A stretch of 64,000 bases of DNA from IMGVR_UViG_3300032214_000715:175164-239163; one strand, 5' to 3'; numbered from the stretch's first letter, positions 18,712 to 60,409 are shown. Numbers and translations are program-made. The notes: generated by a model from the letters alone, not told the origin.

Positions 18712-19251
18712 TTATTTTATTCCTGCTTGACGTTGAATGCTTTTTATATACTCATCATCTTCCTCATAAACTTTAGAAGTTTTTATTCCTGCTATTTCTC
18801 TCCACTCATTTAATTCTGTTTCATTTTTACTCTTATAGTCACTAGAAGTTAATGGAATATGTCGCTGTATGTTTTCGCGTGTAGCCGGGTAACGGTCGTG
18901 TTTTATTTTTATACTCCAGTCCTCGGCCTTCACTCCGGTTAGCGTGTCCAGATCACTTAATAATTCCATAATTTTTCTAGGAGCACTTGGTCTGCGATTC
19001 ATTTCGGCAAACACGTAATATTTGCCGCGCTCTACTTCTCCTGGACTAGTGTCGGCATCAATGATAAATTCATACCCGCGTTCTAACCAACCAGTCAAGT
19101 CTTCTGCCGCTTCTTTTGATTTAATAATAAAACTAAGAGTAATAATGTCGTGATCTTCGCCTATTCTTGACTTGAACTCATCAATTCCAAGCGTAGTTAC
19201 TAGCTGATCTTCAAAATCTAAATGTGATAGACTTTCATTTAATTGTTTCAT
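18712..19251 (-). CDS. Hypothetical phage protein
   Basis: 179 aa; IDADTSPGE motif; two C-terminal xxAGIK motifs. Confidence 0.65.
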   Translation of the reverse strand: MKQLNESLSHLDFEDQLVTTLGIDEFKSRIGEDHDIITLSFIIKSKEAAEDLTGWLERGYEFIIDADTSPGEVERGKYYVFAEMNRRPSAPRKIMELLSDLDTLTGVKAEDWSIKIKHDRYPATRENIQRHIPLTSSDYKSKNETELNEWREIAGIKTSKVYEEDDEYIKSIQRQAGIK

Positions 19252-19880
19252 AATGGTAGTCCTGGTCCACCCATTGGCGGTACTCCTAACGGCGGTCCTC
19301 CCAAGGGAGGCAGACCGCCCATACCGCCCATACCGCCCATGGCGGTCTGCTCTTCTTGATTCTTGATACTTTCAGTATCATAGTCCTTGGCATAAGCGTC
19401 ATCCAAATCTTCCAAGTCAATTGTTTGATTGGCTATGTCTATGCTACCTTCTTGTATATCGGATATTAGATCCTTAGGAATAGTAATTCTAATTAACCAA
19501 ATTTCTCTATCAATTAATTTTGGATAGTGTGTGCCAGAATCATAATCACTGGGAGTTTTTATTTGAATTGGTACTTTTATTTTTGTTTTTCTAAACGCGA
19601 TCTTACATCCAAGCGGCAGCAAACGCTTGGCTCCACGTGGGTCTGGCATCAACATTGCTGGCCACATAAATGTACACGTTACAGCGTACCTAGATACCAC
19701 TGGACCATCGACTAATTCGCCCAGTTTCCAGTTTTTGAATGCGTATATATCGGCCTCATCCAAAACCCGCTCAAAATCCAACAATGTGCTCATTGTCCCA
19801 TCACTGGTATATATACCCTTGATGTTACTGACTATTTCGGCCCACTGTGGGGAATCTATAAAAGTGTACTTTTTTCCCAT
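19248..19880 (-). CDS. Hypothetical phage protein with Gly/Pro/Met-rich tail
   Basis: 210 aa; LLDFERVLD..NW..GELVDGP..MPDPRG. Confidence 0.65.
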   Translation of the reverse strand: MGKKYTFIDSPQWAEIVSNIKGIYTSDGTMSTLLDFERVLDEADIYAFKNWKLGELVDGPVVSRYAVTCTFMWPAMLMPDPRGAKRLLPLGCKIAFRKTKIKVPIQIKTPSDYDSGTHYPKLIDREIWLIRITIPKDLISDIQEGSIDIANQTIDLEDLDDAYAKDYDTESIKNQEEQTAMGGMGGMGGLPPLGGPPLGVPPMGGPGLPL

Positions 19881-19883
19881 AAT

Positions 19884-19914
19884 ATACTATTTATCATCAG
19901 CCGATAAATAGTAT
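19884..19914. promoter_or_regulatory. Back-to-back late promoters (GATAAATA) forming a 12-bp inverted repeat
   Basis: atactatttatc-atcagcc-gataaatagtat between divergent genes; resembles the T4 late promoter TATAAATA. Confidence 0.7.
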
Positions 19915-19935
19915 TAATCAACTGTAGGAACAACA

Positions 19936-20256
19936 ATGACCGTTAATGAACTACTAAAAACTCTAACCGCTATTATGTATCGCGACGATACAGAAATCTC
20001 AACTGACGCCGAGAGCGAATCTTCTCAGGAGAATGCTGACAGTTCAGTTGGTGTTTTTATGCCGCCGCTTCAAGCAGAATTAGAACTATTCAAAAAATCA
20101 ACAGGAGTTGATAATGTGTATGACGAGGAGCAACAAAACTCAGAAGAGCAACATTGCGACTACGAGAATGAAGAAGACGAGCTTGATAGTATAAAAAGAA
20201 TGGCCGGACTTGAGCCAAGAGTAATAGTGGCCGCTCCAACACAAACAGAAATGTAA
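19936..20256 (+). CDS. Acidic hypothetical protein
   Basis: 106 aa; FMPPLQAELELFKKSTGV; ELDSIKRMAGL motif. Confidence 0.65.
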   Translation: MTVNELLKTLTAIMYRDDTEISTDAESESSQENADSSVGVFMPPLQAELELFKKSTGVDNVYDEEQQNSEEQHCDYENEEDELDSIKRMAGLEPRVIVAAPTQTEM

Positions 20257-20257
20257 C

Positions 20258-22105
20258 GTGAGCCGCATACAAAGAATATTCAGTAGCAGAGGACAAGCCG
20301 ACGTTAATTCATATGTTGGTGATCGCGGACGACTTTTTTATGAAGAAAGTGATACTCCGGGTATTGCTCCCGTACTAAGATACAGTGATGGAACTACTCC
20401 AGGTGGATTACCTATAACTGGATCCAGTGATGGCGGAGGAGGTAGCGTCACTAGCGTCAGTGTAGACGGGGGAACAACAGGATTAACTACCAGTGGTGGG
20501 CCAATAGTATCAAGTGGTACAATAACACTAGAGGGAACACTTAATGTATCATCGGGTGGAACTGGAGCAGCAGACTCAGTAACGGCAAGAATAAATTTAG
20601 ATGCCGCTAGAAGAGGAAGTAATAATGATATAACAAGTTTATCTGGACTTACAACTCCGCTTAGTGTAGCTCAGGGAGGAACGGGTGTAACTTCAATATC
20701 TGGATATCTTCGTGGAAACAATAATGACCCGTTTGACAGCGTTAATAATATACCATTTGATGATATAACAGGAATCGTGCCTATTAGTCAAGGAGGAACT
20801 GGTCAAACAGCCTTTTCGACTGGCATTTTAGTCAGTGATGGAACAACTCTTACTACTACTAACCTAATCTCAGGAAATGACATTGACGGTAACATAACCG
20901 GAAACTCTGCTAACGTTACCGGAATAGTTGGAATAAATCACGGTGGGACTGGAGCGATTACTCCAAGTACCGCTAGAGCAGCGTTAGAAGCAGCAAGAAG
21001 CGGAGCAAACGGTGACATTACTAGTCTAAGCGGTCTTACTACACCATTAAGCATAGCTCAGGGCGGAACAGGCGTTACGAATGCGTCCGATGCGCTAACA
21101 GCACTGCTGCCAAGTCAAGTAGCAAATGAAAATAAATTTTTAAAGACTGACGGAACCAACGTTAGTTGGGCATCAGTTACGACATCGCCCGCTAGAGTAT
21201 TGACAGTTGGTATAGACGCGATCACCATTCAAGGATGTATTAATTTAGCGACCGATGCGACTTCAGTTACGCCATACATAGTTCAAATACCACCGGGAAG
21301 ATATACCGAAAATTTAACACTAAAAGGGTCGGTAATGATTCAAGGAATGGGTAATCAGGAAGACACGACCAGTGTTGCTATTACTGGATATCACACTCTG
21401 TCTGGAACAGCAGCAAATGCTCTTAATAACAGAGTTTCTATTGCTAATATATTATTTGTTTCGGATGGGTCATTGAATCCTGTATTCGCTGTTAGCGGAA
21501 CAACTGCGACTCAATTTAACATTCAGGGTTGTTATATTCAAAATACCACTGCTAATACAGCCGCGGTGACATTTCAGATCGGTGTAAACGCTTCACTATA
21601 TCTAGATAACAGTACCGTTCAAATGGCTACCAACGGAGGAACTCAATTTAATATGGGCGGCGGATCCATTTATCTTAGAAACGTTCGCTCTGGAGGCGGT
21701 ACTAAAATTATAAACATGTCTGCCGCAGCATATGCCGAAATCACATATAGCAGACTAAGCTGTACGGGAACATCAGAAGCAATTTCAATATATGGAAACG
21801 GAGCGCTGGGCGCTTTCCCACTCAGTGGTCTAGTGAGCGCTGGATGGACCTCATTTCAAAACACAGCAACAAATGGAAATGGAGTAAATCTAATCGCCAG
21901 CGGGGCCAGTATGTTGGCATACTCCTGTTCTTTTGATGTATTGAGTGGGGTCAGTAACTACGTAATAACGGGAGTCTCTGGAACTAGCTTTGTTCAATTG
22001 AACAATAACTACGCTAACATACCGGGAATTTTATCAAGAAACGTGAAAATTAAAAATACAGTGACTCTACTGACTTACAGTAGCGCATTGACCAGTACTG
22101 CGTAA
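20258..22105 (+). CDS. Tail fibre/spike with putative C-terminal beta-helix
   Basis: Repeated (V/I)xxGGTG and DITSLSGLTTPLS(V/I)AQGGTG; C-half TIQGCIN..IPPGRYTENLTLKGSVMIQG typical of right-handed beta-helix starts. Confidence 0.7.
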   Translation: MSRIQRIFSSRGQADVNSYVGDRGRLFYEESDTPGIAPVLRYSDGTTPGGLPITGSSDGGGGSVTSVSVDGGTTGLTTSGGPIVSSGTITLEGTLNVSSGGTGAADSVTARINLDAARRGSNNDITSLSGLTTPLSVAQGGTGVTSISGYLRGNNNDPFDSVNNIPFDDITGIVPISQGGTGQTAFSTGILVSDGTTLTTTNLISGNDIDGNITGNSANVTGIVGINHGGTGAITPSTARAALEAARSGANGDITSLSGLTTPLSIAQGGTGVTNASDALTALLPSQVANENKFLKTDGTNVSWASVTTSPARVLTVGIDAITIQGCINLATDATSVTPYIVQIPPGRYTENLTLKGSVMIQGMGNQEDTTSVAITGYHTLSGTAANALNNRVSIANILFVSDGSLNPVFAVSGTTATQFNIQGCYIQNTTANTAAVTFQIGVNASLYLDNSTVQMATNGGTQFNMGGGSIYLRNVRSGGGTKIINMSAAAYAEITYSRLSCTGTSEAISIYGNGALGAFPLSGLVSAGWTSFQNTATNGNGVNLIASGASMLAYSCSFDVLSGVSNYVITGVSGTSFVQLNNNYANIPGILSRNVKIKNTVTLLTYSSALTSTA

Positions 22106-22231
22106 TTACGCACAGAATAATATTTATCAACTCAACGCGTGAAATAAGTGCTTAAGTGTTGATTAAGGTATCTTCTTAAATAGTTGTGTTGCTGTAAGAA
22201 AGCAACAAACTTAACCACTAGGAGATATAAC

Positions 22232-23017
22232 TTGGGTAGAAGACGTAACAACGCACTGCGTAAAGAACAGGATCATCAATTCAATATGATTACTAACAAG
22301 CAAGCAAAGATTTTTTATCAAAAGCACGATAGTAGAGTGGAATCAAATACTATTCCGTTTAATCCAGCTAAGATAAAAAAACAGATTGAATTAGTACCAA
22401 AAACAATCAATCAGGAAAATTATATACTAGCACTCACTAATTCAAACGTTGACGTAGTGGTAGTCAGCGGGCCAGCAGGGACTGGAAAAACTTACTTAGC
22501 TATGTTGGCCGCAATTAAGGCTATGAAAAACAAAGAGTGCGAAAGAATAGTATTATGTAGACCGTCTGTTTCTATAGAAGATGAGAAACACGGCTTCTTG
22601 CCCGGAGACTTAAATTCAAAATTAGAGCCCTGGGTAAAACCTATGATTGACGTATTACGAGAATTCTATTCAATGAAAGAAGTAGAAGGTATGTTAGCAG
22701 AGCAAGTAATTGAATTTGCTCCTCTAGGAATGATGCGAGGCAGAACTTTTAAAAATACGTGGATATTCGCCGATGAGATGCAGAACGGCACTCCCACGCA
22801 ATTCAAAATGCTACTAACTCGCATAGGTCAAGGAAGTAAAATTATTATAGGCGGGGACGTGGAGCAGACAGACAGAAAACAGCCCGACAACGGACTGTTA
22901 GACTTCAAGCAAAAAATTAAAAAACATCCAGTAGATGGAATTGAAGTTTGTGAATTTGATAGAAGAGACATTCAACGTCATCGTATAATTGATGACGTAT
23001 TAAATCTTTACAAATAA
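22232..23017 (+). CDS. phoH: PhoH-family ATPase
   Basis: GPAGTGKT; GFLPGDL..K..PW; MRGRTF; DEMQN; LTRIG..SKIII.GD..Q.D; likely TTG start after GGAG. Confidence 0.93.
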   Translation: MGRRRNNALRKEQDHQFNMITNKQAKIFYQKHDSRVESNTIPFNPAKIKKQIELVPKTINQENYILALTNSNVDVVVVSGPAGTGKTYLAMLAAIKAMKNKECERIVLCRPSVSIEDEKHGFLPGDLNSKLEPWVKPMIDVLREFYSMKEVEGMLAEQVIEFAPLGMMRGRTFKNTWIFADEMQNGTPTQFKMLLTRIGQGSKIIIGGDVEQTDRKQPDNGLLDFKQKIKKHPVDGIEVCEFDRRDIQRHRIIDDVLNLYK

Positions 23018-23034
23018 CTCACATTTTATGTTTA

Positions 23035-23060
23035 AAAAAGCCCGACTAGTCGGGCTTTTT
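23035..23060. terminator. Bidirectional terminator between convergent genes
   Basis: aaaaagcccgactagtcgggcttttt, perfect palindrome. Confidence 0.85.
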
Positions 23061-23315
23061 ACTAGATTCTTGATTTATTAGTATCAGTTGCTCTATTAGA
23101 GCTGGGTATATTTGTGAGTAGTACTCGTTCATTTTTTCAAATGATGTTGGCAATACCGACCCCTCTACCACGCACTTTACTACCTTTTTTTCTTTATAAT
23201 CTAGTATGATGTTACACATTGATTGATCGCTAGCTTTTAGTCTTTTGCTAAATCCAACTTGTTCATCAATTTGATTATTTGGCTTTTTGTAAAAACTTAC
23301 AAGTAAATAACGAAT
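23046..23315 (-). CDS. Hypothetical protein (89 aa) with apparent ATT start
   Basis: AAGGAG 6 nt before ATT; (M)RYLLVSFYKKPNNQIDEQV...NIILDYKEKKVVKC...YYSQIYP...KPD*; fills the gap after the clamp loader. Confidence 0.65.
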   Translation of the reverse strand: MRYLLVSFYKKPNNQIDEQVGFSKRLKASDQSMCNIILDYKEKKVVKCVVEGSVLPTSFEKMNEYYSQIYPALIEQLILINQESSKKPD

Positions 23316-23326
23316 GATATTCTCCT

Positions 23327-24259: not shown

Positions 24260-24561
24260 TAATTCCTCAACATTTCAACTGTAATAATTTGTGCGATTGA
24301 TTCACCTAAGTCTTGATCTTGCGTGACTATATGAAGATTACGATCATGTTCATCACGTTTACGATCATACGTGGAGAACTCCAAAATGTATCCTCCATTA
24401 GCACGATGAATCTGTAAGTTCATAGGATGATCTCCTAGTGATCGTTCTATCGGCTTACTTGATGATAACATAGCTCTCGTTCGTGGCTGATCTGGAGGGC
24501 ATGCTTCTTCATCCCACGATTGTCTAACTTTTTTGCTAAACCATCTATCAAACCACTTCAT
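24259..24561 (-). CDS. Hypothetical protein
   Basis: 100 aa; IHRANGGYILEF; translationally coupled on both sides. Confidence 0.65.
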   Translation of the reverse strand: MKWFDRWFSKKVRQSWDEEACPPDQPRTRAMLSSSKPIERSLGDHPMNLQIHRANGGYILEFSTYDRKRDEHDRNLHIVTQDQDLGESIAQIITVEMLRN

Positions 24562-24920
24562 TATATCACCTTATTACTTAGAGTATCGTCTGTTACGGGC
24601 TCATCGCTTACCATCAAAATGTCTTTTACATCCACTCTGCGTATAGTATGAACACCATCATCGTCTTGAATTTTGATTCCACGAGTCCAACGACCGTGAT
24701 CAATCAATATCCACTGACCGATCTTTACATCTTGTTGAGTTGGGCCAATAGCATATACTTGTCCCCAGCGAGGTCTAATGCCGCTGTTCTTGGCATCGTC
24801 GCTTACCAACACTATTCCAGTGCTAGTTACTCGCTCGTCAAAGTTCATATCTTTTACTATTACGTTATTTCCCAACGGAATTAATCCGCTGATTTTATTA
24901 GGTTCGTAGCTGTATTTCAT
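24561..24920 (-). CDS. groES: GroES-like co-chaperonin
   Basis: LIPLGNNVIV..E..TSTGIVL...GQVYAIGP...VKIGQWIL...DILMV. Confidence 0.85.
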   Translation of the reverse strand: MKYSYEPNKISGLIPLGNNVIVKDMNFDERVTSTGIVLVSDDAKNSGIRPRWGQVYAIGPTQQDVKIGQWILIDHGRWTRGIKIQDDDGVHTIRRVDVKDILMVSDEPVTDDTLSNKVI

Positions 24921-24921
24921 T

Positions 24922-25323: not shown

Positions 25324-25326
25324 ATT

Positions 25327-27321: not shown

Positions 27322-30300
27322 TCACAGTATTACTGCTTCTATTTTTTTAACTTCATCCAACTCGCTTGACTCAATGGCTATAGCAAAAACATTACTGTAA
27401 TCAATTACGTCAATGATTTCATTTACAGCATTAATTGAGATAGCGTAGCCATTATTGTGTGCTATCAATCTATCTCCTTTATTGACTTTGCCAATTACCT
27501 TTACTGGGACTCTACCCTTTAGTGCTACGTATATTCCATTTATTAAAGCAGAATTCATCATATAAGCTGGATTTTTACTTATTACTCCAATAGCTTTATC
27601 TCTAAATGATGAAGCTGTTATTTCTGCTGCTCCGCCAATAGACACTACCGTTCCGTAATCATAGTTTTCATCGGACAAGTATTTCTCAGCTAAGTCGGCA
27701 TACTGAGCGCTAGTAGCAACCCCGTTAAATTTTACAGCATTAAGCTCGCCGTTTGAATTTCTACAAGCAATACTATTTGCTGTTCCCACGCCGGCCGTAT
27801 CTACTCTAGCTTCTCTCCAAGAATCAGTTGATATATCAACTACTTTAAGTTTTGTGACCGTGACGATTTGATTTGAATCTATCGTTAATCCATTTCCGAT
27901 CTTGATTCCACCTAGAACACTATCCGTGGCAACTGGTAATTCATAAACAGATGAAGCAGCAACTGATATAACTCCGTTGGCATCTATAGTTACATTGCTT
28001 CCCTGCTTGACACCACCAAGTGTAGATGAAGTAGCTATCGGTAATTCATAAACAGATGAAGCAGCAACTGATATGACTCCATTGGCATCTATGGTCACAT
28101 TACTTCCCTGCTTGACACCGCCCAGCACTGAGCTAGTAGCTATCGGTAATGAATAAGGAGCAGCAACTGATATAACTCCGTTGGCATCTATAGTTACATT
28201 GCTTCCTTGCTTGACTCCACCTAATATGGATGAAGTAGCTATCGGTAATTCGTAAACAGATGGAGCAGCAACTGATATAACTCCGTTGGCATCTATAGTT
28301 ACATTACTTCCCTGTTTTACACCACCCAGTACTGAGCTAGTAGCTATCGGTAATTCGTAAACAGATGGAGCAGCAACTGATATAACTCCGTTGGCATCTA
28401 TAGTTACATTACTTCCCTGAATAACTCCACCCAGTGTAGATGAAGTAGCTATCGGTAATGGGGGTGCTGACACCGCAGCAGAAACCCATTCTGTTCCATT
28501 CCATTTTAAATAATCATTAGTTTGTTTATTTCCGGTAGATACATTTAACAACTCATCTAGTGAATCGCGTTGACGTATTAAATAATTTGTCTGACTAATT
28601 ATTGATCTAGCGTCAGTTTCCATCTTTGCTATTAATACTCTAGTAAAAGAACTAGGCAATTCTATATCGGACTTAAAAACGGTTACAGATGTTGTATCGT
28701 CATCATTTTTTAATACATAGATATAATTAATTGAATTAGCAGAAAGACTAATGCTCTGTGTTGGAATAGTAGTGTAGTACCCACCTATAAATAGTGGGCA
28801 CGTTGTAACATACGCAATTAATCCAGTAGCACTTTCAGTAGACACATAAATCTGGTTTCTAGGTTTACTACCTGTTAGCCACTCTAGTTCTGTTAGTTCT
28901 GTTTTAACCCCAGTTACATCTTTGGACGACAGAAATACCATAGAGTCATAATTACCGCTTGAAGCGGCTCTATAGTATCCTAGAGCAGTACTATATCCAA
29001 AGGATCCGCCAGGATAACCATTGGTTGATGTGTATCCTCCTGAGCCAGTAGATGTTTCAGCAAAGCTAGACACGTGAGAAGTACTAACGATGTCCGAGCT
29101 AATTTCTATAGATGCCCAATAAAATGCTCTTCCGCCAACTACATTTATACCAAAATTTACTAATAACTTCCCGCTATTAGTTAATAACGTCGGGCCACTA
29201 AATTCAATTTGATTGATATTGTCACCGCGATTTGTTTTACCGTAATCAATTTCTGTTTGAAAGACGGAATTTGTGTTTAGCGTCCAAGTACCATTGGTAC
29301 ACTTGGCCAAATAGCACATGCCGACTGAATCTTTAACTATGGCATAGTATTTGGGAGTGATAGTATTTGCGTCCCAGCAAATATGAATCACAGTTATTCC
29401 AGATTTTCCATTAAGTGTGGTTGGTATTGATGGTACGATAATGTTTGTGTTTGTATAAGTTCTAGTGGCGCCCGTGCTGTTAATAGTGTAAATTGGTTCA
29501 TTTCCTACTATCCAACAGTAGCTTGGTGTAGTTCCAACCACCGTAGTTGAGAAATTGGTAATAGACCCATTATTTTTTATTACAGCAGGAGCATTAGCTA
29601 AAGGATCTAAATTTATATCAGAATTACTTAATATCAACGTATCATTAGTTTGTCCCTGAGCCTTTGAGGCAAACTCAGTCTTGCTGAATGTAGTTTGTAT
29701 AATTTTTGTTCCGTAAGTTACTGATCCTGCTGAAAAATACATATTATTGTCTATTACATAGACCGAATCGCTGTAAACATACTTGGACCAGGGAGACGCA
29801 TCAATTATTCTTTCGGTAAAACTGGTATATCTAGCGGAATTGTTTATGCTTAATGTTTTGTAAGTGAACCCACTAGTGTGTGGCAAAACATATACATCTC
29901 CTATATCAGTTGAAGTCCACGTACTTCTAAATAATTGAAATATTGTTCCGCTATACTCATCTGTTACAAGAGAAGTGGAGTAGCCGGCGCCACCCAATCC
30001 CTGACTCATACCTCCGTTATCCGTATCCCACGTGGAGTCGCTTAACTGATTATATCTAAAAGTTCCAGATTTAATTGGAATTAAATTAACAGTAGTTCCG
30101 CTACCACTTTCTATCCAGGATTTTGGTATAGACCATGATATGTCAAGTGCTACACCCTGACCAACTGATGCTCCTGTGCTAGTGGTATATACATACCAGA
30201 TATGAAATCTTTGATGAAAAGTTTCCGAAAATGAATTCCAGGTAAACCCATAAGAATTATTGGGCGCATATCCTAGTAAAGGCAAAACGTTTGGAGCAAT

Positions 30301-31956
30301 TCTTCCTTGACCAGTGGTGTCGGAAGTGTTAACCATAGTGACTTTATCATACAACAGTTGAGAGCGTAGTAAAGAAAGATTAGCATCATACACTTTTAGA
30401 GTTACTGTATTAGTATCCGAACTTACGTCCGATACTAATATTCTATCGCCACTAGTAGTTGATACTAAAGAGAAATTGGTTCTGCTAGATAATGATGTTA
30501 CGTCATAAGCAAGCGTCCAATCTCTCCACTTAGACGAACCGTATGTCTTTGCTATTACTATTCTAGTAATCGTTTCTGGTTTTTGAATTGTGGTTAGTTT
30601 TAAAACTATAAAATTAGTACCTAGATTTAAAACATCCTGAACCTTCTCATTAACATTTAAAAACGTGGCGCTTATGAGTTCATTATCAAAAATTAAACTA
30701 TCAGTACTTTTTATTCTATAAGCTTTAGCTACATTTCGTGATCCTACTGGAGTTGACGTAGAAAAGTAAAATACTTGATTTCCAGTTTTATCAACAAACA
30801 TAAAATTGGTGGCGTTAAATGAGCCCTGAGAAAAATTAAAACTTCCATATACCGGGATATAATTCTCTTTTAGATACCCAGCAAACGGAGAAAAATTCAA
30901 AAAGTCCTTTATATCAGCGCTAGATACGGAAATGGTTCCGGTCGTTTCGTCAGTTGTAATTCTTTCTCCAATTCTTACTCCGCCCAATGTAGAACTAGTA
31001 GCTTTCGGTAATTCGTAAACTGGCGGAGCAGCAACTGATATAACTCCGTTGGCATCTATAGTTACATTACTGCCCTGTTTTACACCACCCAGTACTGAGC
31101 TAGTAGCTATAGGTAATGAATAAGGAGCAGCAACTGATATAACTCCGTTGGCATCTATAGTTACATTACTGCCCTGTTTTACACCACCCAGTGTAGATGA
31201 AGTAGCTATCGGTAATGAATAAGGAGCAGCAACTGATATAACTCCGTTGGCATCTATAGTTACATTACTGCCCTGTTTTACACCACCCAGTGTAGATGAA
31301 GTAGCTATAGGTAATGAATATGAATAGCTAGGAATGTTTAAAATATTTCCAGTAAGAGTGGATACTCCGCTACTTCCATTTGTAGTTAGAATAATTGGGC
31401 CTTGATAATCAGTACCCTCAACAGCAAAATCTATACTAGTTCCGTTACCTTTTAATAATCCGTTTACAGTGGTTGATATAGTTATTTCAGCAGTAGTTGA
31501 ATTTTTACTCACAGTGCCAAAAAAACCGTTTTCATTTTTTATAGCTACAGTGTTAATATACCCAGCTGGATTAGATACAGAATAGCCGCCCAAGTTTGAT
31601 AGTGCCGTTGATGGCGAAGTTGCTCCGGTGCCGCCGTTTTCTACAGATATAGGATAATCAACTGGTGAGGTGACAGATAATAATCCAAAGTCATCTACCG
31701 TTAATCCTTCACCAACTTTTATTGCCCCTAATGTGGTGGGACTCGCTATGCCAACAACACCGGTAGCACCACTGTGCTCAGTCAAAATTTCAGTAACATT
31801 AGGCCCATCTGAGGTTTCAGAATGAAGCGCGGGGTCATTTCCTATGTACAATCTTCTGGCATCGGTAGCATATCCAATCTCACCAACGTCCAGTTGAGGC
31901 AAATTTTCATTTGCGCCTGTTCTTAATAAAATTTTGCTTATCTGTTTTATAGGCAT
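27322..31956 (-). CDS. Large tail fibre with tandem repeats and C-terminal intramolecular-chaperone-like domain
   Basis: N-terminal ISKILLRTG..LPQLDVGEIGYATDARRLYIGN; 33-35 aa repeats; C-terminal YADLAEKY..GTVV..IGVIS.NPAY.MN..VALKGRVPVKV. Confidence 0.82.
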   Translation of the reverse strand: MPIKQISKILLRTGANENLPQLDVGEIGYATDARRLYIGNDPALHSETSDGPNVTEILTEHSGATGVVGIASPTTLGAIKVGEGLTVDDFGLLSVTSPVDYPISVENGGTGATSPSTALSNLGGYSVSNPAGYINTVAIKNENGFFGTVSKNSTTAEITISTTVNGLLKGNGTSIDFAVEGTDYQGPIILTTNGSSGVSTLTGNILNIPSYSYSLPIATSSTLGGVKQGSNVTIDANGVISVAAPYSLPIATSSTLGGVKQGSNVTIDANGVISVAAPYSLPIATSSVLGGVKQGSNVTIDANGVISVAAPPVYELPKATSSTLGGVRIGERITTDETTGTISVSSADIKDFLNFSPFAGYLKENYIPVYGSFNFSQGSFNATNFMFVDKTGNQVFYFSTSTPVGSRNVAKAYRIKSTDSLIFDNELISATFLNVNEKVQDVLNLGTNFIVLKLTTIQKPETITRIVIAKTYGSSKWRDWTLAYDVTSLSSRTNFSLVSTTSGDRILVSDVSSDTNTVTLKVYDANLSLLRSQLLYDKVTMVNTSDTTGQGRIAPNVLPLLGYAPNNSYGFTWNSFSETFHQRFHIWYVYTTSTGASVGQGVALDISWSIPKSWIESGSGTTVNLIPIKSGTFRYNQLSDSTWDTDNGGMSQGLGGAGYSTSLVTDEYSGTIFQLFRSTWTSTDIGDVYVLPHTSGFTYKTLSINNSARYTSFTERIIDASPWSKYVYSDSVYVIDNNMYFSAGSVTYGTKIIQTTFSKTEFASKAQGQTNDTLILSNSDINLDPLANAPAVIKNNGSITNFSTTVVGTTPSYCWIVGNEPIYTINSTGATRTYTNTNIIVPSIPTTLNGKSGITVIHICWDANTITPKYYAIVKDSVGMCYLAKCTNGTWTLNTNSVFQTEIDYGKTNRGDNINQIEFSGPTLLTNSGKLLVNFGINVVGGRAFYWASIEISSDIVSTSHVSSFAETSTGSGGYTSTNGYPGGSFGYSTALGYYRAASSGNYDSMVFLSSKDVTGVKTELTELEWLTGSKPRNQIYVSTESATGLIAYVTTCPLFIGGYYTTIPTQSISLSANSINYIYVLKNDDDTTSVTVFKSDIELPSSFTRVLIAKMETDARSIISQTNYLIRQRDSLDELLNVSTGNKQTNDYLKWNGTEWVSAAVSAPPLPIATSSTLGGVIQGSNVTIDANGVISVAAPSVYELPIATSSVLGGVKQGSNVTIDANGVISVAAPSVYELPIATSSILGGVKQGSNVTIDANGVISVAAPYSLPIATSSVLGGVKQGSNVTIDANGVISVAASSVYELPIATSSTLGGVKQGSNVTIDANGVISVAASSVYELPVATDSVLGGIKIGNGLTIDSNQIVTVTKLKVVDISTDSWREARVDTAGVGTANSIACRNSNGELNAVKFNGVATSAQYADLAEKYLSDENYDYGTVVSIGGAAEITASSFRDKAIGVISKNPAYMMNSALINGIYVALKGRVPVKVIGKVNKGDRLIAHNNGYAISINAVNEIIDVIDYSNVFAIAIESSELDEVKKIEAVIL
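27900..28460 (-). repeat. Tandem 99/105-bp coding repeats (5 near-identical plus 1 degenerate)
   Basis: gcagcaactgatat recurs at 27956, 28061, 28160, 28265, 28370; encodes LPIATSSxLGGVKQGSNVTIDANGVISVAA. Confidence 0.9.
31021..31320 (-). repeat. Tandem 99-bp coding repeats (3 copies), same unit as 27900-28460
   Basis: ggagcagcaactgatataactccgttggcatc at 31025, 31124, 31223. Confidence 0.9.
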
Positions 31957-40471: not shown

Positions 40472-41178
40472 TTGAACGCCATATCAATTACGGTTTTAAT
40501 CTCATTCATTAACACCAAATCTCTTTTGAATTTTATGTTCCAACGCTCAGTATCAATATATTCCCATATCACGGCACGTTGATCCATATTCAACTCAGAC
40601 AAAAATGTGTTACCACTGTCACTCAGATAAAGCACCCAGGGGCTAATATGACCAGTACTAATCAAATGACACAACTTATTTTTGTTATAGTAGTTTAACA
40701 CATCTTGAAGACGAATATTTTCTGCGTCGGCTATCTCTAGCATAGTTTTTATGCTACGTTTCACGGCATCGTAAGCGTCTTCTGTTCTAAGATACTGTGT
40801 TAAATACTTAGTATATACTGAGTCACTACTCCAATTATCAATTGACACGTTATTACTTAGCAAGTGATTTAAGTACTCAGCTACATTTACAACTTTAACA
40901 TTCACGCAATATGTCCCGAATCTTAGAAAGGCCGAGTAGTAAGCACTTTCAGCAAACGCTTTATAGTCTTTTTTCTTTTTCCCAGGTTGTATTCTGGAAT
41001 AAAACGTGAGCCAGGAATCATAAGCAATGCGATTTTGAGGCCTGTCTCTTTCTTGCCAGCGAAGTTTCTGCTCACATAAATGCTTAATCAATGTAGACTC
41101 ACGAACAAAACTTCTATTACAATGTTGACAAGTGTTTGATTCCTGTACGTCAATTGCCTGAGAGATTTTCATATTCAT
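40468..41178 (-). CDS. Protein with N-terminal C2H-C zinc finger, in the replication operon
   Basis: CQHCNRSFVRESTLIKHLCE; ATGA-coupled to the dnaE C-fragment. Confidence 0.65.
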   Translation of the reverse strand: MNMKISQAIDVQESNTCQHCNRSFVRESTLIKHLCEQKLRWQERDRPQNRIAYDSWLTFYSRIQPGKKKKDYKAFAESAYYSAFLRFGTYCVNVKVVNVAEYLNHLLSNNVSIDNWSSDSVYTKYLTQYLRTEDAYDAVKRSIKTMLEIADAENIRLQDVLNYYNKNKLCHLISTGHISPWVLYLSDSGNTFLSELNMDQRAVIWEYIDTERWNIKFKRDLVLMNEIKTVIDMAFK

Positions 41179-41743
41179 TCAATTCTTGCTCAGTGACTAA
41201 AGAAGATAAAACTTCTATGTCTTCTAATTTTAGAGTTTGGTACTGTGTTGCTATTTTGTATTTGTGATTTAATGACCGTTCTAGCGCGACAGATATTTGC
41301 TTTATATCATCAGCGCTGCTGTTCTTGTATATTTTGCTAAAGTAATCCGATAATTCTTTGCGTTTTACTGGCTCTTTTAACTGACTTATCTTGGAGCTGA
41401 GATGAGGAATCCATTGATGAAACTGCTTTCCAAGCCCAGGACTGGTCGCACACAGCATCATCCATTGAAGTTCTGGATGATTTTGAACGTGCTCATTAAA
41501 CAGATGCTTGTTAGCACAAATATCAGTGCTCATTACGTAGTAATTACTAATTTCAGTCTTGCCCTTTACAGTGCTGATCCAGTGTAGCATCATATAGGGA
41601 ACAAATTTTTTCCTCTGCTCTTCACTTAAAGAACTATAGTAATCGTAATTCTTGCGATCTATTTGCTCAATCGCCGAGAATAGATCAAAGTCCTGACGTT
41701 CAAACTTTTCGTCTGAGCCAGTTTTATTCTTTGCTGCTGTCAT
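41150..41743 (-). CDS. Putative clamp-loader small subunit (T4 gp62-like)
   Basis: DLFSAIEQID.KNYDYY..F.PYMMLHWIS..N...HPELQW; size and context. Confidence 0.55.
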   Translation of the reverse strand: MTAAKNKTGSDEKFERQDFDLFSAIEQIDRKNYDYYSSLSEEQRKKFVPYMMLHWISTVKGKTEISNYYVMSTDICANKHLFNEHVQNHPELQWMMLCATSPGLGKQFHQWIPHLSSKISQLKEPVKRKELSDYFSKIYKNSSADDIKQISVALERSLNHKYKIATQYQTLKLEDIEVLSSLVTEQELNEYENLSGN

Positions 41744-54547: not shown

Positions 54548-54548
54548 A

Positions 54549-56279: not shown

Positions 56280-56280
56280 C

Positions 56281-57831
56281 TTAATACCTCTTTAATAATC
56301 CACTTAATTTGCGAATTCGAGCTAACTCGTTTTCGGCAAGTGGTGGTGCTGATGGCATAGAGTCCAAATCACGCGGTGGTTGCTGAGGGAGTTCTTTTGA
56401 CTGCGCCGGTGATTTATTATTGCTTGATGGTTTAAGTTTTTCTGTATTTGGTTTTGCTGTAGGCTCTGGTTTAGCTGGTGTGTCTAAACCTTCTTTGTCT
56501 AGATCGTCCAACTTATTCAGTACTTTACTAAAGTGCTCGTTGTCTGGCTGTTCTCTCATCCAAGCAATAATTATTGTTTTTGCGTCTGCGTTTGGATCGC
56601 CGGCGGCATTCTCAAGTCTATTGAATAAGGTGTCATCATCAATATAATCTTTAATTTGCCCTATTGCGTTGGTTGCGTCTGGACCCAAAAATAATTCTTC
56701 ACTATCAGTCGATAGTAATTCAACTAATGCATCTATGTCGCCAGTCTGCGTTGGCTCTAAATCTTCTTCAACGCTAGCAGGATTCATATCAGCGACTATG
56801 CTTGAATTATTAGAGCTTGTGGAACTTGAATTACTGCCGCCTGTAAGCCCACTAACTGCTCCGCTAACTGCTCCTCTTGCCACTCCACTGGCTACTGCGC
56901 CAGCTACTCGACCAACTGCTCCTATCGCTAGCCCAAGATTTTCCAATACCGGTATAGCAGCCTCTATTCTTGGGTCTAGATGTTGGTGAGTAAACATTTC
57001 AGCCACCATACCCTCTGAGGGTTGAACTTCTCTTAGAGTTGGAGTCCAGTTTTCAAAGTACTGTCTAAATCCTCTGCTGCTACGTAGTTTTTTCATTGTC
57101 TCGCGCAGATTTAAATAGTGTTCAGCTGCCTCTGTTATAAGAACGTTTACGCTTTCATTGAACTGTTTTTTATGTGTGGCTCTTATAAATCCACCTAACT
57201 TTTTGATATCGTCGCACAACTGAGCTATATGTTTGCCGCGCTCATCATATGGATTTCCGCCTTCTGCTATCAATCTAGCAAACACATAACCCTCAGAGGG
57301 TTTCTTTGTGGGTAGAACAAATCTTTCGCCGAATTGATTTTCAACAAATATTTTGTCCACGTGTCTAAATCGTTGATCGTTTTCTTCTAATGCCTTATTG
57401 TGACGTATAAACATTTTAACTTGCGCCGGCGTGGAATCGCTAGTACTGGTATATTTGGTGCCGTGATAACCCTCGCTTATAGAGTGCTTTTTTTGTCTCT
57501 TCATCCAATCGTTAAAGCTTCCTGGGTCTGTATCGTATCGCAGTCCATGTCTTGTTGCCCAATTACTCATATCTTTTAAAAAGTCAGTCCAATCAGCGGT
57601 TGCGTTTTTTACAGCATTTTTATTAAAAAAGATTATTAACTCATTAAGATTGTTTATCGCTATAATAAAAGTTCCGACTTTTTTGTTTTTTCTTTTAAAA
57701 GTAAAATTAAAAGCAGTGGCATTTTCTGCGTCAAGCGCCGGTTTACCATCGTTAATAGCTACGGGATCAAAATTCAGTGTATCCAACTTATCATAAAGTT
57801 TAACGTTTAATGGTTCTTTTGTTTTAGGCAT
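56281..57831 (-). CDS. Large phage protein, putative head-associated
   Basis: IFVENQFGERF..ARLIAEGGNPYD..G.HI; C-terminal ELARIRKLSGL. Confidence 0.6.
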   Translation of the reverse strand: MPKTKEPLNVKLYDKLDTLNFDPVAINDGKPALDAENATAFNFTFKRKNKKVGTFIIAINNLNELIIFFNKNAVKNATADWTDFLKDMSNWATRHGLRYDTDPGSFNDWMKRQKKHSISEGYHGTKYTSTSDSTPAQVKMFIRHNKALEENDQRFRHVDKIFVENQFGERFVLPTKKPSEGYVFARLIAEGGNPYDERGKHIAQLCDDIKKLGGFIRATHKKQFNESVNVLITEAAEHYLNLRETMKKLRSSRGFRQYFENWTPTLREVQPSEGMVAEMFTHQHLDPRIEAAIPVLENLGLAIGAVGRVAGAVASGVARGAVSGAVSGLTGGSNSSSTSSNNSSIVADMNPASVEEDLEPTQTGDIDALVELLSTDSEELFLGPDATNAIGQIKDYIDDDTLFNRLENAAGDPNADAKTIIIAWMREQPDNEHFSKVLNKLDDLDKEGLDTPAKPEPTAKPNTEKLKPSSNNKSPAQSKELPQQPPRDLDSMPSAPPLAENELARIRKLSGLLKRY

Positions 57832-57871
57832 ATTTAAAGTCCGATTATCTAGTATTTATCACTGACTCACT

Positions 57872-58648
57872 CTATTGAATCGTATCGGATCTGCTATCAA
57901 ATTTTTTTCTTACATCACCGACGGTAAAGTATCCACGTTTTGCTACTTCAGGAAGCTCGCGAAATGCTGGGTTTTGATCCCACACACTACCGCGATTTAA
58001 TTTGTTAGCTGAAATACTTTTAAAAATTGGAACGTTATATTGCTTTCTAGCACCCAACACAAAGTCATCTGGCTTGTTGTGTGTTACCACCGCTGGCATA
58101 AACGTTGATAGATAGATATCACTAGCCTTTGATCCGGGCGGTAATTTTTTAATCTTGTAGTATCTTAATACCCAATCAAGTTGCTCTACTGCCGACATTC
58201 CTCTTAACTTGTCGGTAGTTGTTCCAATATACTCAGCAGTTTTTGGCATAAACTGAATAAGTCCAGTTGCTCCAATTCTGTTTGTTATACTTGGATCAAT
58301 AGTTTGTTTTGTTTCAAAAGACATCACCTTTAATAAATCTAGCGGATTTACCTGTAATGAGTTAGATATCTGCCTTAATTTTTGAGTGAATGGACCAATT
58401 TCATTTCTGGGCATTTTTGTCTTATTAGTAAGAATTTTCTCAATGTTATCTTGTTCAGGATATCTCTGTTGTAATTTAGTGACTTCTTGACCTGTCATTG
58501 CACTATGATCTTGTGCTGGTTCGCGATCTTGATAATACTTATATCCGCCGCCGAGAGCAAACCCAGTCGCTAACGCAGCAGCTCCGAGTTTATCTCGCCA
58601 TCCCTCTTCTAGTTCAGTATTTTCTAGTATGATTTCATTAACGCGCAT
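57872..58648 (-). CDS. Lytic transglycosylase/lysozyme-like virion protein
   Basis: VMSFET (catalytic Glu); GATGLIQFMPKTA; QLDWVLRYY; N-terminal LEEGW plus hydrophobic stretch. Confidence 0.8.
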   Translation of the reverse strand: MRVNEIILENTELEEGWRDKLGAAALATGFALGGGYKYYQDREPAQDHSAMTGQEVTKLQQRYPEQDNIEKILTNKTKMPRNEIGPFTQKLRQISNSLQVNPLDLLKVMSFETKQTIDPSITNRIGATGLIQFMPKTAEYIGTTTDKLRGMSAVEQLDWVLRYYKIKKLPPGSKASDIYLSTFMPAVVTHNKPDDFVLGARKQYNVPIFKSISANKLNRGSVWDQNPAFRELPEVAKRGYFTVGDVRKKFDSRSDTIQ

Positions 58649-58655
58649 CTAGTAT

Positions 58656-60215
58656 TTATGACATGACCATTATAAACGGCATCGGTTGAATTTCTTCGCT
58701 ATGATCGCGTATGTGTGAGTCAAGATCAACGTGATAGTTTTGTAGATGCTGTAGCATTCTTACTATCAACACTAAAGCCATTACCAAGTCATCAGTTTCG
58801 CCCAACTTAGCGGCATAACTACCACCACTACTGACAAAAGTTTTTAGTTCGCTTATCAATGATTGACTCTTAATCTTTAACTTTTTACTCTCTATTAGAT
58901 TTTTTAACTTACTACAAGCGTTTAGTTTTGATTTATTAGTAGTATTGAATCCTCGTCTGTATCTTCGTGATGCTCCGACGGATTTTGGTTCACTAATCAT
59001 AGTGCCTGGTATATTTTCTTCACCGTATTCTGCTAGAGATATGAGTGCCGCTTCTCCAATAGTATTGTTCTCTAAACTGTAGTACAAATTGTTTGGCTGT
59101 TTTGTGTGTTCAACTATTTCTTTATTAATAGTAGCTATCAACTTAATTTGTTCTGGTATAGTGGTGCGATTGTGAGTCCATTCTGCTACTTGCTCGGTAG
59201 TATCAGCTTCAAATACTTGTATAGCAGCAGGGTCTCCTCCAGTTCCTAAGCTAGGGTCCAGTGATACTACGTATATATGATCTCTACTAGGTTTTTTGAA
59301 CCAACGAACTTGTCCAGTCTTATACAGTGGAGCGGACGCCTCTAATCCAGCAAGAACTATACTGTCTATTAATGTCTCCTCGTCAATGATGAATTCGCAA
59401 TTGTGTTCGCGGCGGAATCTTTCATCACCTATTTTACTGCGTTCTTCTTCAGCCCATATTTGATCACGATCTGGGTGTTCATCCCACAATGCCATAAATG
59501 GACTGAACCCATTTTTACCCAACTTAGTTGGGTTACCATATGCGTCAACTTTTTTGTTGGCATCTTTCCATATTTGCGCAAATTGATCTTCATCGCTATT
59601 TGGAGTACTTGTGATAATACACTTACCGCCTGTTGCTAGAGTCGGCGATATAGATGTCCAGAATTCTTTAGCAATTGTTGGTCTTACGAATGCGAACTCG
59701 TCAAGATATAGCAGTGACAATGCCATGCCTCGTCCGGTTTTTTCGGTAGTTGCTCGTGCTACTATGCGACTTTTGTTCTCCAGGTCTATATTTCCCTGAT
59801 TGTATGATTCTACGCCCGGTTTTAACCACATTGGGCACATTTCATACGCATAGCGTATACGCTGCATGATTTCTTGAGCTCCGCTGTACTGATGCGCTGC
59901 TATCAATATAGTTTTATCATAGTTGAACATAGCAAACCATAACAAGTAACCAGCAGCACTAGTGGTTTTACCCAACTGTCTACCAAGCAAAGAAACTGAA
60001 AACCGATTCTCGTGATAATTTTTAATTAAATCAACTTGATAGGCGTATGGATCATATAGCACTTGGCCCTTAGTAGGATGCTGGATATAAAAGTAGTTTC
60101 TCATCCAGTACTCGTAACCAGTATCAGGGTCAGCGCATTTTAGAACCTCAAGTATTTGTTCATCAGTAAGACTTATTACTGCGCCTTTAGAACGAATAAA
60201 TTGATTATCGCTCAT
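58656..60215 (-). CDS. Terminase large subunit (T4 gp17-like)
   Basis: YAYQ; GRQLGKTT; LYLDEFAF; ITSTPN; RREHNCEF; SLDPSLG.G.D; TDDLVMAL; start MSDNQ at 60215. Confidence 0.93.
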   Translation of the reverse strand: MSDNQFIRSKGAVISLTDEQILEVLKCADPDTGYEYWMRNYFYIQHPTKGQVLYDPYAYQVDLIKNYHENRFSVSLLGRQLGKTTSAAGYLLWFAMFNYDKTILIAAHQYSGAQEIMQRIRYAYEMCPMWLKPGVESYNQGNIDLENKSRIVARATTEKTGRGMALSLLYLDEFAFVRPTIAKEFWTSISPTLATGGKCIITSTPNSDEDQFAQIWKDANKKVDAYGNPTKLGKNGFSPFMALWDEHPDRDQIWAEEERSKIGDERFRREHNCEFIIDEETLIDSIVLAGLEASAPLYKTGQVRWFKKPSRDHIYVVSLDPSLGTGGDPAAIQVFEADTTEQVAEWTHNRTTIPEQIKLIATINKEIVEHTKQPNNLYYSLENNTIGEAALISLAEYGEENIPGTMISEPKSVGASRRYRRGFNTTNKSKLNACSKLKNLIESKKLKIKSQSLISELKTFVSSGGSYAAKLGETDDLVMALVLIVRMLQHLQNYHVDLDSHIRDHSEEIQPMPFIMVMS

Positions 60216-60409
60216 ACTGGTCGCTCCCCAGTAAGATATGGTTTTGAGAACCAAAGTTTAAACCACTCATCAGTGCCAGGTCTGATATTGTTCTCACGCA
60301 TTAATCGTGCCTTTTCGGCAGCAGTAATGCTTATATTACTACCTGCGGTTGATTCTCCCGATTGTGGTTTAATGCCGGCGATTGCTCGCCATCTATCCAA
60401 TTCGTCCAT
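60212..60409 (-). CDS. Small protein upstream of the terminase
   Basis: 65 aa; MRENNIRPGTDEWFKLWF; ATGA overlap with the terminase. Confidence 0.65.
   Translation of the reverse strand: MDELDRWRAIAGIKPQSGESTAGSNISITAAEKARLMRENNIRPGTDEWFKLWFSKPYLTGERPV

What the first reader, a model, noticed from the sequence alone, without database searches (positions are those of the whole stretch)
18712..60409. Shared short 'EL..(I/W)R..AG(L/I)' tag on unrelated proteins
Seen: ELNEWREIAGIK and YIKSIQRQAGIK (18712 C-terminus), ELDSIKRMAGL (19936), ELARIRKLSGL (56281 C-terminus) and ELDRWRAIAGIK (60212 N-terminus). It is an amphipathic helix ending in (A/S)G(L/I), placed at or near termini of otherwise dissimilar late proteins. 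Inference: a docking or sorting signal, for example for loading into the prohead or binding the scaffold or portal. If so it could be used as a packaging tag.
Basis: partly seen in the sequence, partly recalled or inferred. Interest (0 to 1): 0.6.

Follow-up and report, generated by a model that had tools for sequence, protein, structure and literature searches.

The report
Scaffold-derived capsid-docking peptide tag
A 12-residue helix-plus-hook peptide that ends the head-scaffolding protein in a large group of jumbo phages is also attached to several otherwise unrelated proteins of this phage, most likely to load them into the assembling head; its binding partner has not been shown.

Summary
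All five peptides are at the stated places, in real ORFs. They are the only similarity between those proteins and occur far more often than chance allows.

The window is the end of an incomplete 239-kb jumbo-phage contig related to PA5oct and the RaK2-like phages. In metagenomic relatives the tags are the best-conserved part of three carrier families.

The decisive lead lies outside the window. In relatives with a complete T4-type head module, the coiled-coil protein between the prohead protease and the major capsid protein ends in the same peptide. Its last residues are nearly invariant in about 190 environmental homologues and recognisable in PA5oct, RaK2, 121Q, CBB, Atu_ph07 and Xoo-sp13. 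T4 gp22 lacks it.

The tag is therefore most likely the scaffold's capsid-docking end, copied onto cargo proteins. It resembles the 80alpha SP / SaPI1 CpmB helix-and-hook and does the job of the T4 capsid targeting sequence. A protease-type [LIVM]xE site often sits just before it.

The receptor is inferred, not shown: the one complex prediction gave no answer. A rival is recognition by the phage's own ClpA/DnaJ/ClpS chaperone set.

Verdict: new variant of a known kind, moderately high interest.

The parts
18712..19251 (-). 179-aa protein (phrog_13138 'virion structural protein'): an alpha/beta N-domain followed by a flexible tail that carries two tags
   Evidence: 120 homologues keep both tags down to 44% identity. 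In the AF2 model (pLDDT 84.6) the tail helices end at the A-G of each tag.
18781..18816 (-). Tag 1 of the 179-aa protein, ELNEWREIAGIK
   Evidence: It is the most conserved segment of the family: column entropy 0.82 bits, against 1.32 for the folded domain and about 2.1 for the linkers. L147, N148, E149 and R151 are invariant.
18715..18750 (-). Tag 2 of the 179-aa protein, YIKSIQRQAGIK, at the extreme C-terminus
   Evidence: A176 is invariant and G177 nearly so.
19936..20256 (+). 106-aa acidic protein made of little more than two tags: a variant at 20074-20109 and the canonical tag at 20179-20211
   Evidence: PSSM score 25.6 bits. Homologues with the tag occur in G001 (115 aa) and in L006 and L030.
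56281..57831 (-). 516-aa protein, homologue of PA5oct gp278 (MS-detected virion protein), with the tag 4 residues from its C-terminus (56296-56328)
   Evidence: 21 of 26 distinct IMG/VR homologues end in a tag despite hypervariable linkers.
60212..60409 (-). 65-aa protein: N-terminal tag (60368-60403), disordered linker, small three-helix domain. Its stop overlaps the TerL start as ATGA.
   Evidence: More than 350 homologues, nearly all starting with the tag.
58656..60215 (-). Large terminase (context gene, no tag)
   Evidence: Pfam Terminase_6N and Terminase_6C. 52% identical to PA5oct TerL.
15183..18232 (-). ClpA-like AAA+ protein (15183-17459) and DnaJ-like protein (17456-18232), encoded close downstream of the 179-aa gene (a 155-aa holin-like gene lies between). 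These are context for the rival explanation.
   Evidence: Pfam Clp_N, AAA, AAA_2 and ClpB_D2-small; DnaJ and DnaJ_C. The same neighbourhood is found in G001 and PA5oct.
41153..41188 (-). Weak, uncertain tag-like C-terminus (QELNEYENLSGN) of the 197-aa ORF 41150-41743
   Evidence: PSSM score 10.2 bits, a level at which about 3 chance hits per proteome are expected. Not counted as a member.

Best explanation
The tag is a short docking module: about three turns of amphipathic helix capped by [AS]-G, followed by a hydrophobic 'hook' residue, often with a basic residue or the chain end after it. Its original and conserved home is the extreme C-terminus of the head-scaffolding protein of this T4-related jumbo-phage supergroup.

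Shown:
- The same peptide ends the scaffold-position protein in all relatives examined.
- It recurs on several unrelated protein families at N-terminal, internal or C-terminal positions within flexible segments.
- It is under stronger constraint than the sequence around it.

Inferred:
- By analogy with other scaffolds that bind HK97-fold capsid proteins, the tag binds a site on the inner face of the procapsid. The most likely site is the N-terminal arm or propeptide of the gp23-type major capsid protein.
- Proteins carrying a copy are therefore co-assembled into the prohead as cargo. Candidates are inner-body or ejection proteins, bivalent tag-only accessory proteins, and one membrane protein in a relative.
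- The gp21-type prohead protease then cuts at a [LIVM]-x-E site that commonly lies just before the tag. This would free cargo and scaffold from the shell, as cleavage does for the T4 capsid targeting sequence.

The window's own scaffold gene is not on the contig, which ends just short of where the closest relative has it.
For: 1. Non-random and the only shared feature of the carriers. PSSM hits at 15 bits or more, observed against the shuffled mean: G000 5 against 0.17, G001 7 against 0.43, PA5oct 4 against 0.20.

2. Purifying selection on the tags. In the 179-aa family both tags are kept in 120 homologues, and tag 1 is the most conserved segment. The 65-aa family keeps its N-terminal tag. In the 516-aa family 21 of 26 distinct homologues end in the tag behind hypervariable linkers.

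3. In the complete relative G001, a 368-aa coiled-coil protein ends ...IDIKRLAGL. It lies between Peptidase_S77 and Gp23 and downstream of Portal_T4.

4. That C-terminus is nearly invariant in 120 plus 68 environmental homologues. It is recognisable in PA5oct, RaK2, 121Q, CBB, Atu_ph07 and Xoo-sp13, several of which are annotated 'scaffolding protein'.

5. The closest relative, G005 (TerL 91% identical), has this scaffold directly upstream of the 84-aa/126-aa/65-aa/TerL block.

6. The PA5oct non-scaffold carriers gp281 and gp249 are MS-detected in virions, whereas the scaffold gp330 is not. In phAPEC6 the scaffold is barely detected, and phAPEC6 and 121Q contain an inner-body rod.

7. [LIVM]xE precedes the tag in 18 of 21 members of the 516-aa family, against 24% of background windows. 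The 1,050-aa carrier has five QGVAEG repeats.

8. AF2 places a helix that stops at A-G, followed by a non-helical hook, with flexible flanks. This is the shape described for the 80alpha scaffold and CpmB C-termini that bind the capsid N-arm.
Against: - No binding evidence exists. The single complex prediction (capsid protein plus scaffold C-terminus) returned 'no answer'.
- The window's genome lacks capsid, portal, protease and scaffold genes, so the link rests on relatives.
- The scaffold-position protein has no detectable sequence homology to T4 gp22.
- MS detection in PA5oct is a soft criterion: SSB and UvsX homologues are also flagged.
- The head or tail location of the carriers is unknown. 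The 106-aa gene sits beside a fibre-like gene, and the 179-aa gene lies two genes from the chaperone genes.
- The enrichment of acidic residues before tags partly inflates the [LIVM]xE count.
Confidence: 0.58

Rival explanations
1. The tag is still a prohead-incorporation signal, but the receptor is not the major capsid protein. It docks onto another core component: the portal, the gp21-type protease (as a substrate-recruiting exosite next to its cleavage site), or the scaffold body itself, so that cargo co-polymerises into the core.
For: - T4 internal proteins associate with the scaffolding core through their targeting sequence.
- [LIVM]xE sites lie next to the tags, which would suit a protease exosite.
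- The 65-aa carrier is translationally coupled to TerL, which hints at the portal vertex.
Against: - Twelve portal sites can hardly serve the scaffold plus six or more cargo families, some of them with 2-3 tags.
- Where scaffold ends have been resolved or mapped (80alpha, P22), they bind the capsid protein.
- The capsid protein is the most conserved partner candidate, at 60-68% identity across the supergroup, which matches the tag's wide conservation.
Confidence: 0.2
2. The tag is a recognition signal for the phage's own chaperone or unfoldase set (ClpA-like AAA+, ClpS-like adaptor, DnaJ-like). It would mark assembly-prone proteins, the scaffold included, for holding, unfolding or removal.
For: - The 179-aa gene lies upstream of the DnaJ-like and ClpA-like genes, separated from them by a holin-like gene, here and in G001; in PA5oct the homologues are directly adjacent.
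- A ClpA-like gene is present across the supergroup.
- A ClpS-family protein elsewhere in this genome has a tag-like segment in its N-terminal extension.
- Non-polar C-terminal ends are typical AAA+ degrons (own knowledge).
Against: - Many tags are internal or N-terminal, and they form a defined helix-cap motif rather than a free terminus.
- In RaK2 the ClpA-like gene is far from the 179-aa and 210-aa homologues.
- The ClpS-like instance scores only 13.8 bits, lacks the hook residue, and has no relatives in which to test conservation.
- Nothing links the other carriers to chaperone genes.
Confidence: 0.12
3. There is no common partner. The motif is a generic helix C-cap (Schellman-type A-G-hydrophobic) that arises repeatedly in acidic, disordered phage proteins, or it is a remnant of small duplications.
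For: - The motif is short, and helix-capping A-G-[LI] is common in proteins (own knowledge).
- Some weak hits are clearly chance.
Against: - The excess over shuffles is roughly 20-fold or more.
- Tags are more conserved than the folded domains they are attached to.
- They are retained at chain ends behind hypervariable linkers in 21 of 26 homologues.
- They match the invariant scaffold end.
Confidence: 0.05

Closest known systems
Phage 80alpha scaffolding protein and SaPI1 CpmB C-terminal 'helix-and-hook' (RIIK motif), PMC5644958
   Same: An amphipathic helix of about 11 residues plus a short hook at the extreme C-terminus of the scaffold. The same peptide is present on a second, otherwise unrelated protein. 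It binds the N-arm of an HK97-fold capsid protein inside the procapsid.
   Different: There is no sequence relation ([AS]G[LI] instead of RIIK). Here the peptide sits on six or more families encoded by the phage itself rather than by a satellite. It also occurs N-terminally, internally and in tandem. Binding to the capsid protein is not shown here.
T4 capsid targeting sequence (CTS) of internal proteins and Alt (Mullaney and Black 1996, as summarised in PMC5694885)
   Same: A short transferable peptide that brings diverse proteins into a T4-type prohead and is removed by the gp21 protease at (L/I)xE. This phage group has gp20, gp21 and gp23 homologues, and protease-type sites lie beside the tags.
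   Different: The T4 CTS is strictly N-terminal, has a different sequence, and is not shared with gp22. T4 gp22 ends differently. Cleavage has not been demonstrated here.
Herpesvirus scaffold C-terminal tail, shared by the protease precursor and the assembly protein and released at the M-site
   Same: A C-terminal amphipathic helix of the scaffold binds the major capsid protein. Two proteins share the tail, and a maturational protease related to gp21 cuts just upstream to release the scaffold.
   Different: In herpesviruses the sharing arises from nested genes, not from independent acquisition by unrelated proteins. The sequence also differs.
Encapsulin cargo-loading peptides (own knowledge)
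   Same: A short terminal peptide on unrelated cargo proteins docks to the interior of an HK97-fold shell, and it can be used as an engineering tag.
   Different: Encapsulin peptides bind in extended form and have a different consensus. No scaffold or protease is involved, and encapsulins are cellular compartments, not viruses.

Membership tests
Scaffold C-terminal capsid-binding peptide (80alpha SP / CpmB helix-and-hook type) | Located at the extreme C-terminus of the scaffolding protein | tested here: met
   In G001, G005, about 190 environmental homologues and six isolates, the protein between the protease and capsid genes ends in the tag. The window's own scaffold is not on the contig.
Scaffold C-terminal capsid-binding peptide (80alpha SP / CpmB helix-and-hook type) | Short amphipathic helix followed by a non-helical hook | tested here: met
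   The AF2 models have helices at residues 136-154 and 167-176 (179-aa protein) and 3-10 (65-aa protein). Each ends at or just before the A-G and the hook is not helical. This is prediction only, at pLDDT 60-70.
Scaffold C-terminal capsid-binding peptide (80alpha SP / CpmB helix-and-hook type) | Binds the capsid protein N-arm in the procapsid | tested here: inconclusive
   The complex prediction of the capsid protein with the scaffold's last 44 residues gave no answer. A real test needs peptide binding assays or procapsid cryo-EM.
Scaffold C-terminal capsid-binding peptide (80alpha SP / CpmB helix-and-hook type) | Sequence homology to the RIIK motif | tested here: not met
   The consensus here is [DE]-[ED]-L-x-x-[WLI]-[RK]-x-[LI]-[AS]-G-[LI]. 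The resemblance is in function and shape only.
T4 capsid targeting sequence | N-terminal propeptide of 10-20 residues | tested here: not met
   Only the 65-aa family and PA5oct gp281 carry it N-terminally. The other tags are C-terminal or internal.
T4 capsid targeting sequence | Removed by the gp21-type protease at (L/I)xE | tested here: inconclusive
   [LIVM]xE lies just upstream in 18 of 21 members of the 516-aa family, against 24% of background windows. A Peptidase_S77 gene is present in relatives. There are no cleavage data.
T4 capsid targeting sequence | Carried by proteins found inside the head | tested here: inconclusive
   PA5oct gp281, gp249 and gp278 are MS-detected in virions. Homologues of the 179-aa protein are annotated 'virion structural protein' in GAP32 and CBB. 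Head versus tail location is unknown.
T4 gp22 scaffold family (for the tag's presumed parent protein) | Sequence homology to gp22 | tested here: not met
   hhalign probability 0.6%, and there is no Pfam family. Position between the gp21 and gp23 homologues, coiled-coil composition, and absence or scarcity in virions all fit a scaffold.
AAA+ protease degron (ssrA-like) | Must sit at a free terminus and be unstructured | tested here: not met
   Several conserved copies are internal: tag 1 of the 179-aa family, and 2-3 internal copies in the 700-900-aa proteins. They are predicted to be helical.
Encapsulin cargo-loading peptide | Encapsulin shell gene adjacent, and an extended G-S-L-type peptide | tested here: not met
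   The shell here is a gp23-type phage capsid, and the tag consensus and predicted conformation differ.

The most novel reading that the evidence does not exclude
A modular capsid-loading code operates in a globally abundant supergroup of jumbo phages. The scaffold's C-terminal helix-and-hook has been copied onto many unrelated proteins, singly, in tandem and at either end. These include tag-only bivalent proteins and a membrane protein. The copies dock to one site on the gp23-type shell and are clipped off by the prohead protease at an adjacent [LIVM]xE. If so, about 12 residues would suffice to package foreign proteins into very large (T about 28) capsids.
Probability: 0.35. Interest if true: 0.75.

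Novelty: new variant of a known kind. Interest (0 to 1): 0.62.

Why it matters
How jumbo phages load the many proteins found inside their heads is largely unknown outside T4, and no targeting signal has been defined for the RaK2/PA5oct-like group. These phages build T about 28 capsids with an inner body.

A 12-residue signal that is also the scaffold's own docking end would have three uses:
- It would give a sequence rule for predicting head cargo in thousands of uncultured genomes.
- It would point to the scaffold-shell contact in T4-type capsids, which has not been mapped.
- It would offer a compact tag for packaging proteins into large phage capsids.

The idea can be tested directly in the culturable phage PA5oct, which has the tag on its scaffold and on two virion proteins.

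Tried and rejected
- **Complex prediction.** G001 capsid protein (alignment A3) plus the last 44 residues of the scaffold (A4) gave no answer (score 0.01, controls not run). This is neither support nor evidence against.
- **Fold searches on the 179-aa model.** The PDB search gave no match at E <= 0.001, only weak SUI1/ACT-like alpha/beta hits. The BFVD search found only uncharacterised homologues from the same phage group.
- **Profile search of solved structures.** The 179-aa family and the scaffold family found nothing.
- **Atlas search with the 65-aa protein.** Only unnamed viral clusters came back.
- **Pfam Gp23, Portal_T4 and Peptidase_S77 searches of the window's own contig.** No match. 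The tool's controls did not ring either. The contig is 68% complete and ends just before the expected head module.
- **Close-relative search in IMG/VR.** Searches with the 179-aa and 516-aa proteins found only the same genome; the alignment-based search was needed.
- **IMG/VR search for relatives of the ClpS-like protein.** None found, so its tag-like segment could not be tested for conservation.
- **T4 late-promoter word.** Not enriched.
- **hhalign of the scaffold family against T4 gp22.** No homology.
- I then fetched the region as locus L227 and repeated the search by reference.


Full report
**Observation**

The window's ORFs were listed and translated.
- two in the tail of the 179-aa ORF 18712-19251 (-);
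- one 14 residues from the end of the 106-aa ORF 19936-20256 (+);
- one 4 residues from the end of the 516-aa ORF 56281-57831 (-);
- one at residues 3-14 of the 65-aa ORF 60212-60409 (-).

A strict pattern hits four times in all six frames of the window, each time inside one of these ORFs. In a gene set of the whole contig it hits 4 times, against a mean of 0.01 in 2,000 shuffles. BLASTP between the carriers aligns only the tag. A position matrix built from five families gives 5 hits at 15 bits or more in this genome, against 0.17 expected. The matrix was trained on homologues of three of the carriers. The independent confirmations are the 106-aa protein (25.6 bits) and the carriers found in other genomes.

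One is a variant in the 106-aa protein at 20074-20109. The other is the C-terminus of a 1,050-aa low-complexity protein outside the window, which also has AT-hooks and five QGVAEG repeats.

**What the genome is**

The window is the last 64 kb of a single 239,163-bp viral contig, estimated 68% complete. Its large terminase is 52% identical to that of Pseudomonas phage PA5oct and about 44% to RaK2-like jumbo phages. The window mixes virion genes with T4-type replication genes. Homologues of the 179-aa protein are annotated as virion structural proteins in GAP32 and CBB, and the PA5oct homologue of the 516-aa protein (gp278) is MS-detected in virions. Those homologues lack the tag.

**Conservation**

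- 120 metagenomic homologues of the 179-aa protein keep both tags down to 44% identity.
- Tag 1 is the most conserved stretch of that protein: 0.82 bits of column entropy, against 1.32 for the folded domain and about 2.1 for the linkers.
- More than 350 homologues of the 65-aa protein exist, and nearly all of those read start with the tag.
- In the 516-aa family, 21 of 26 distinct IMG/VR homologues end in a tag, although the preceding P/Q-rich linkers are not alignable.

**The key result**

A complete 360,683-bp relative with terminal repeats (G001) was fetched whole and scanned. Besides homologues of the window's carriers, it has the tag as the last residues (...IDIKRLAGL) of a 368-aa coiled-coil protein. 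That protein lies between a Peptidase_S77 (T4 gp21) homologue and a Gp23 capsid homologue, downstream of a Portal_T4 homologue. This is the gp22 scaffold position.

The last ten or so residues are almost invariant in 120 database homologues and 68 distinct IMG/VR homologues, while the residues before them vary. The cultured phages PA5oct, RaK2, 121Q, CBB, Atu_ph07 and Xoo-sp13 have homologous proteins in the same position. Some are annotated 'scaffolding protein', and their ends are recognisably the same motif, for example ...EELRRLAGIK and ...INDLKRLAGIKK. T4 gp22 ends differently, and no sequence homology to it is detectable.

The window's closest relative with data, G005 (TerL 91% identical), has this scaffold and capsid gene directly upstream of the 84-aa/126-aa/65-aa/TerL block. 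The window's contig therefore very probably stops just short of its own copy.

**Other carriers**

- *G001:* the tag also occurs on the 115-aa homologue of the 106-aa protein and on the 96-aa homologue of the 65-aa protein, both next to TerL. It occurs on a 777-aa low-complexity protein syntenic with the 1,050-aa one, which has three copies by eye (two of them at 16 bits or more), one of them C-terminal. It also occurs on a 397-aa protein with a transmembrane segment and at the C-terminal end of a 192-aa coiled-coil protein.
- *Other relatives:* proteins of 700-900 aa upstream of TerL carry two or three internal copies.
- *PA5oct:* gp281 sits just before TerL and has an N-terminal and an internal copy. 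gp249 has one copy. Both are flagged as MS-detected in virions, whereas the scaffold gp330 is not.
- *RaK2:* one further carrier, which like its scaffold has S rather than A before the G.
- *phAPEC6 and 121Q:* both contain an inner-body rod, and the phAPEC6 scaffold is barely detectable in virions.

**Shape and processing**

AF2 models place a helix that ends at or just before the A-G, then a non-helical hook, with low-confidence flexible flanks. A [LIVM]-x-E triplet, the T4 gp21 cleavage type, lies just upstream of the tag in 18 of 21 members of the 516-aa family, against 24% of background windows. Similar triplets precede the scaffold tags of PA5oct, RaK2, 121Q, CBB and Xoo-sp13. The capsid protein aligns to T4 gp23 from about residue 54. 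This leaves an N-terminal extension that ends in an LxE-S site conserved in the supergroup.

**Mechanism proposed**

The tag is the scaffold's docking end and has been copied onto cargo. Tagged proteins would bind the same site on the inner procapsid surface, be built into the prohead, and be released by the protease. The receptor is most likely the capsid protein's N-terminal arm or propeptide, for three reasons:
- scaffold ends bind there in 80alpha and SaPI1;
- the capsid protein is the most conserved candidate partner, at 60-68% identity across the supergroup;
- only the shell offers enough sites.

These steps are inferred, not shown.

**Rivals**

- The receptor may be another core component: portal, protease exosite or scaffold body.
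- The 179-aa gene lies upstream of DnaJ-like and ClpA-like genes, separated from them by a holin-like gene, here and in G001; in PA5oct the homologues are directly adjacent. The genome has two ClpS-family genes, one with a weak tag-like N-terminal extension. The tag could therefore be a chaperone recognition signal. Against this, there are conserved internal copies, the motif has a defined helix-cap shape, the ClpA-like gene is not linked in RaK2, and the ClpS hit is weak.
- A partnerless capping motif is contradicted by the enrichment and the conservation.

**Comparison with known systems**

The closest analogue in shape, and in being shared between a scaffold and another protein, is the 80alpha SP / CpmB helix-and-hook. 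The closest in role within T4-type heads is the capsid targeting sequence. It is a member of neither by sequence, and it differs in position, multiplicity and breadth of carriers. I found no description of this motif in the papers searched.

**Limits**

No binding, cleavage or localisation data exist for any carrier. The one complex prediction gave no answer. MS flags in PA5oct also include SSB and UvsX homologues, so they are soft evidence. The window's own scaffold has not been observed.

Noticed in passing
window 15183-18232 and 24561-24920; contig G000 22381-22890 and 32692-32997 (L227, L229): The phage encodes its own chaperone set: a 758-aa ClpA-like AAA+ protein, a DnaJ-like protein with J and C-terminal domains, a GroES/gp31-like co-chaperonin, and two ClpS-family adaptors. 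One adaptor has a long N-terminal extension that holds a weak tag-like segment. The ClpA-like gene is shared with G001, PA5oct and RaK2.
   Followed up: partly
window 19248-19880 (-): The 210-aa protein (phrog_12928, 'virion structural protein') ends in a Gly/Met/Pro-rich tail (GGMGGMGG...). This recalls the GGM repeats at the end of GroEL. Its gene is always paired with the 179-aa gene.
   Followed up: no
contig G000 110247-113399 (L228), outside the window: The 1,050-aa low-complexity protein has a duplicated segment of about 150 residues with AT-hooks (GRGRP) and five QGVAEG repeats that look like prohead-protease sites. It also has an internal tag variant and a C-terminal tag. It is a candidate DNA-binding inner-head protein.
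   Followed up: partly
window 60195-60430: The stop of the 65-aa tagged ORF overlaps the ATG of the large terminase (ATGA). The ORF list's TTG start for TerL at 60254 is probably 13 codons too early.
   Followed up: yes
window 60826-61080 (-): The 84-aa ORF matches only the first ~46 residues of tail-fibre and baseplate-connector families (phrog_677 and others). It is a free-standing fibre 'anchor' domain.
   Followed up: no
window 61114-64000 compared with L232 4687-6144: Between the 84-aa gene and the contig end, the window has two ORFs (446 aa, and 398 aa or more) that the closest relative G005 lacks. G005 has an opposite-strand 485-aa ORF there, followed by the capsid gene. This spot next to the head module is variable, and the contig ends inside it.
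   Followed up: partly
window 18243-18710 (-): A holin-like three-transmembrane protein (GTA_holin_3TM) is encoded between the 179-aa gene and the DnaJ-like gene. In G001 the homologous domain is part of a 330-aa protein.
   Followed up: no
PA5oct 85850-87037 (L104 4085-5272): The major capsid protein of PA5oct contains an internal segment resembling the tag (...LNRLRILAGP...). In other members this position reads ...ALPGA..., so it is probably coincidence within a conserved capsid helix.
   Followed up: partly
window 20258-22105 (+) and 27322-31956 (-): A 615-aa fibre-like protein with repeated G-G-T-G segments follows the 106-aa tagged gene. In G001 the homologous pair sits next to TerL. A 1,544-aa protein has many head-fibre-like repeat hits.
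   Followed up: no
L098 11304-12497 (G001) and contig G000 7884-8651: A G001 tag carrier has a transmembrane segment and a conserved basic, Cys-containing C-terminal domain. That domain is shared with a 255-aa protein of the window's genome, which lacks a clear tag. A membrane-anchored tagged protein might tether assembling proheads.
   Followed up: no
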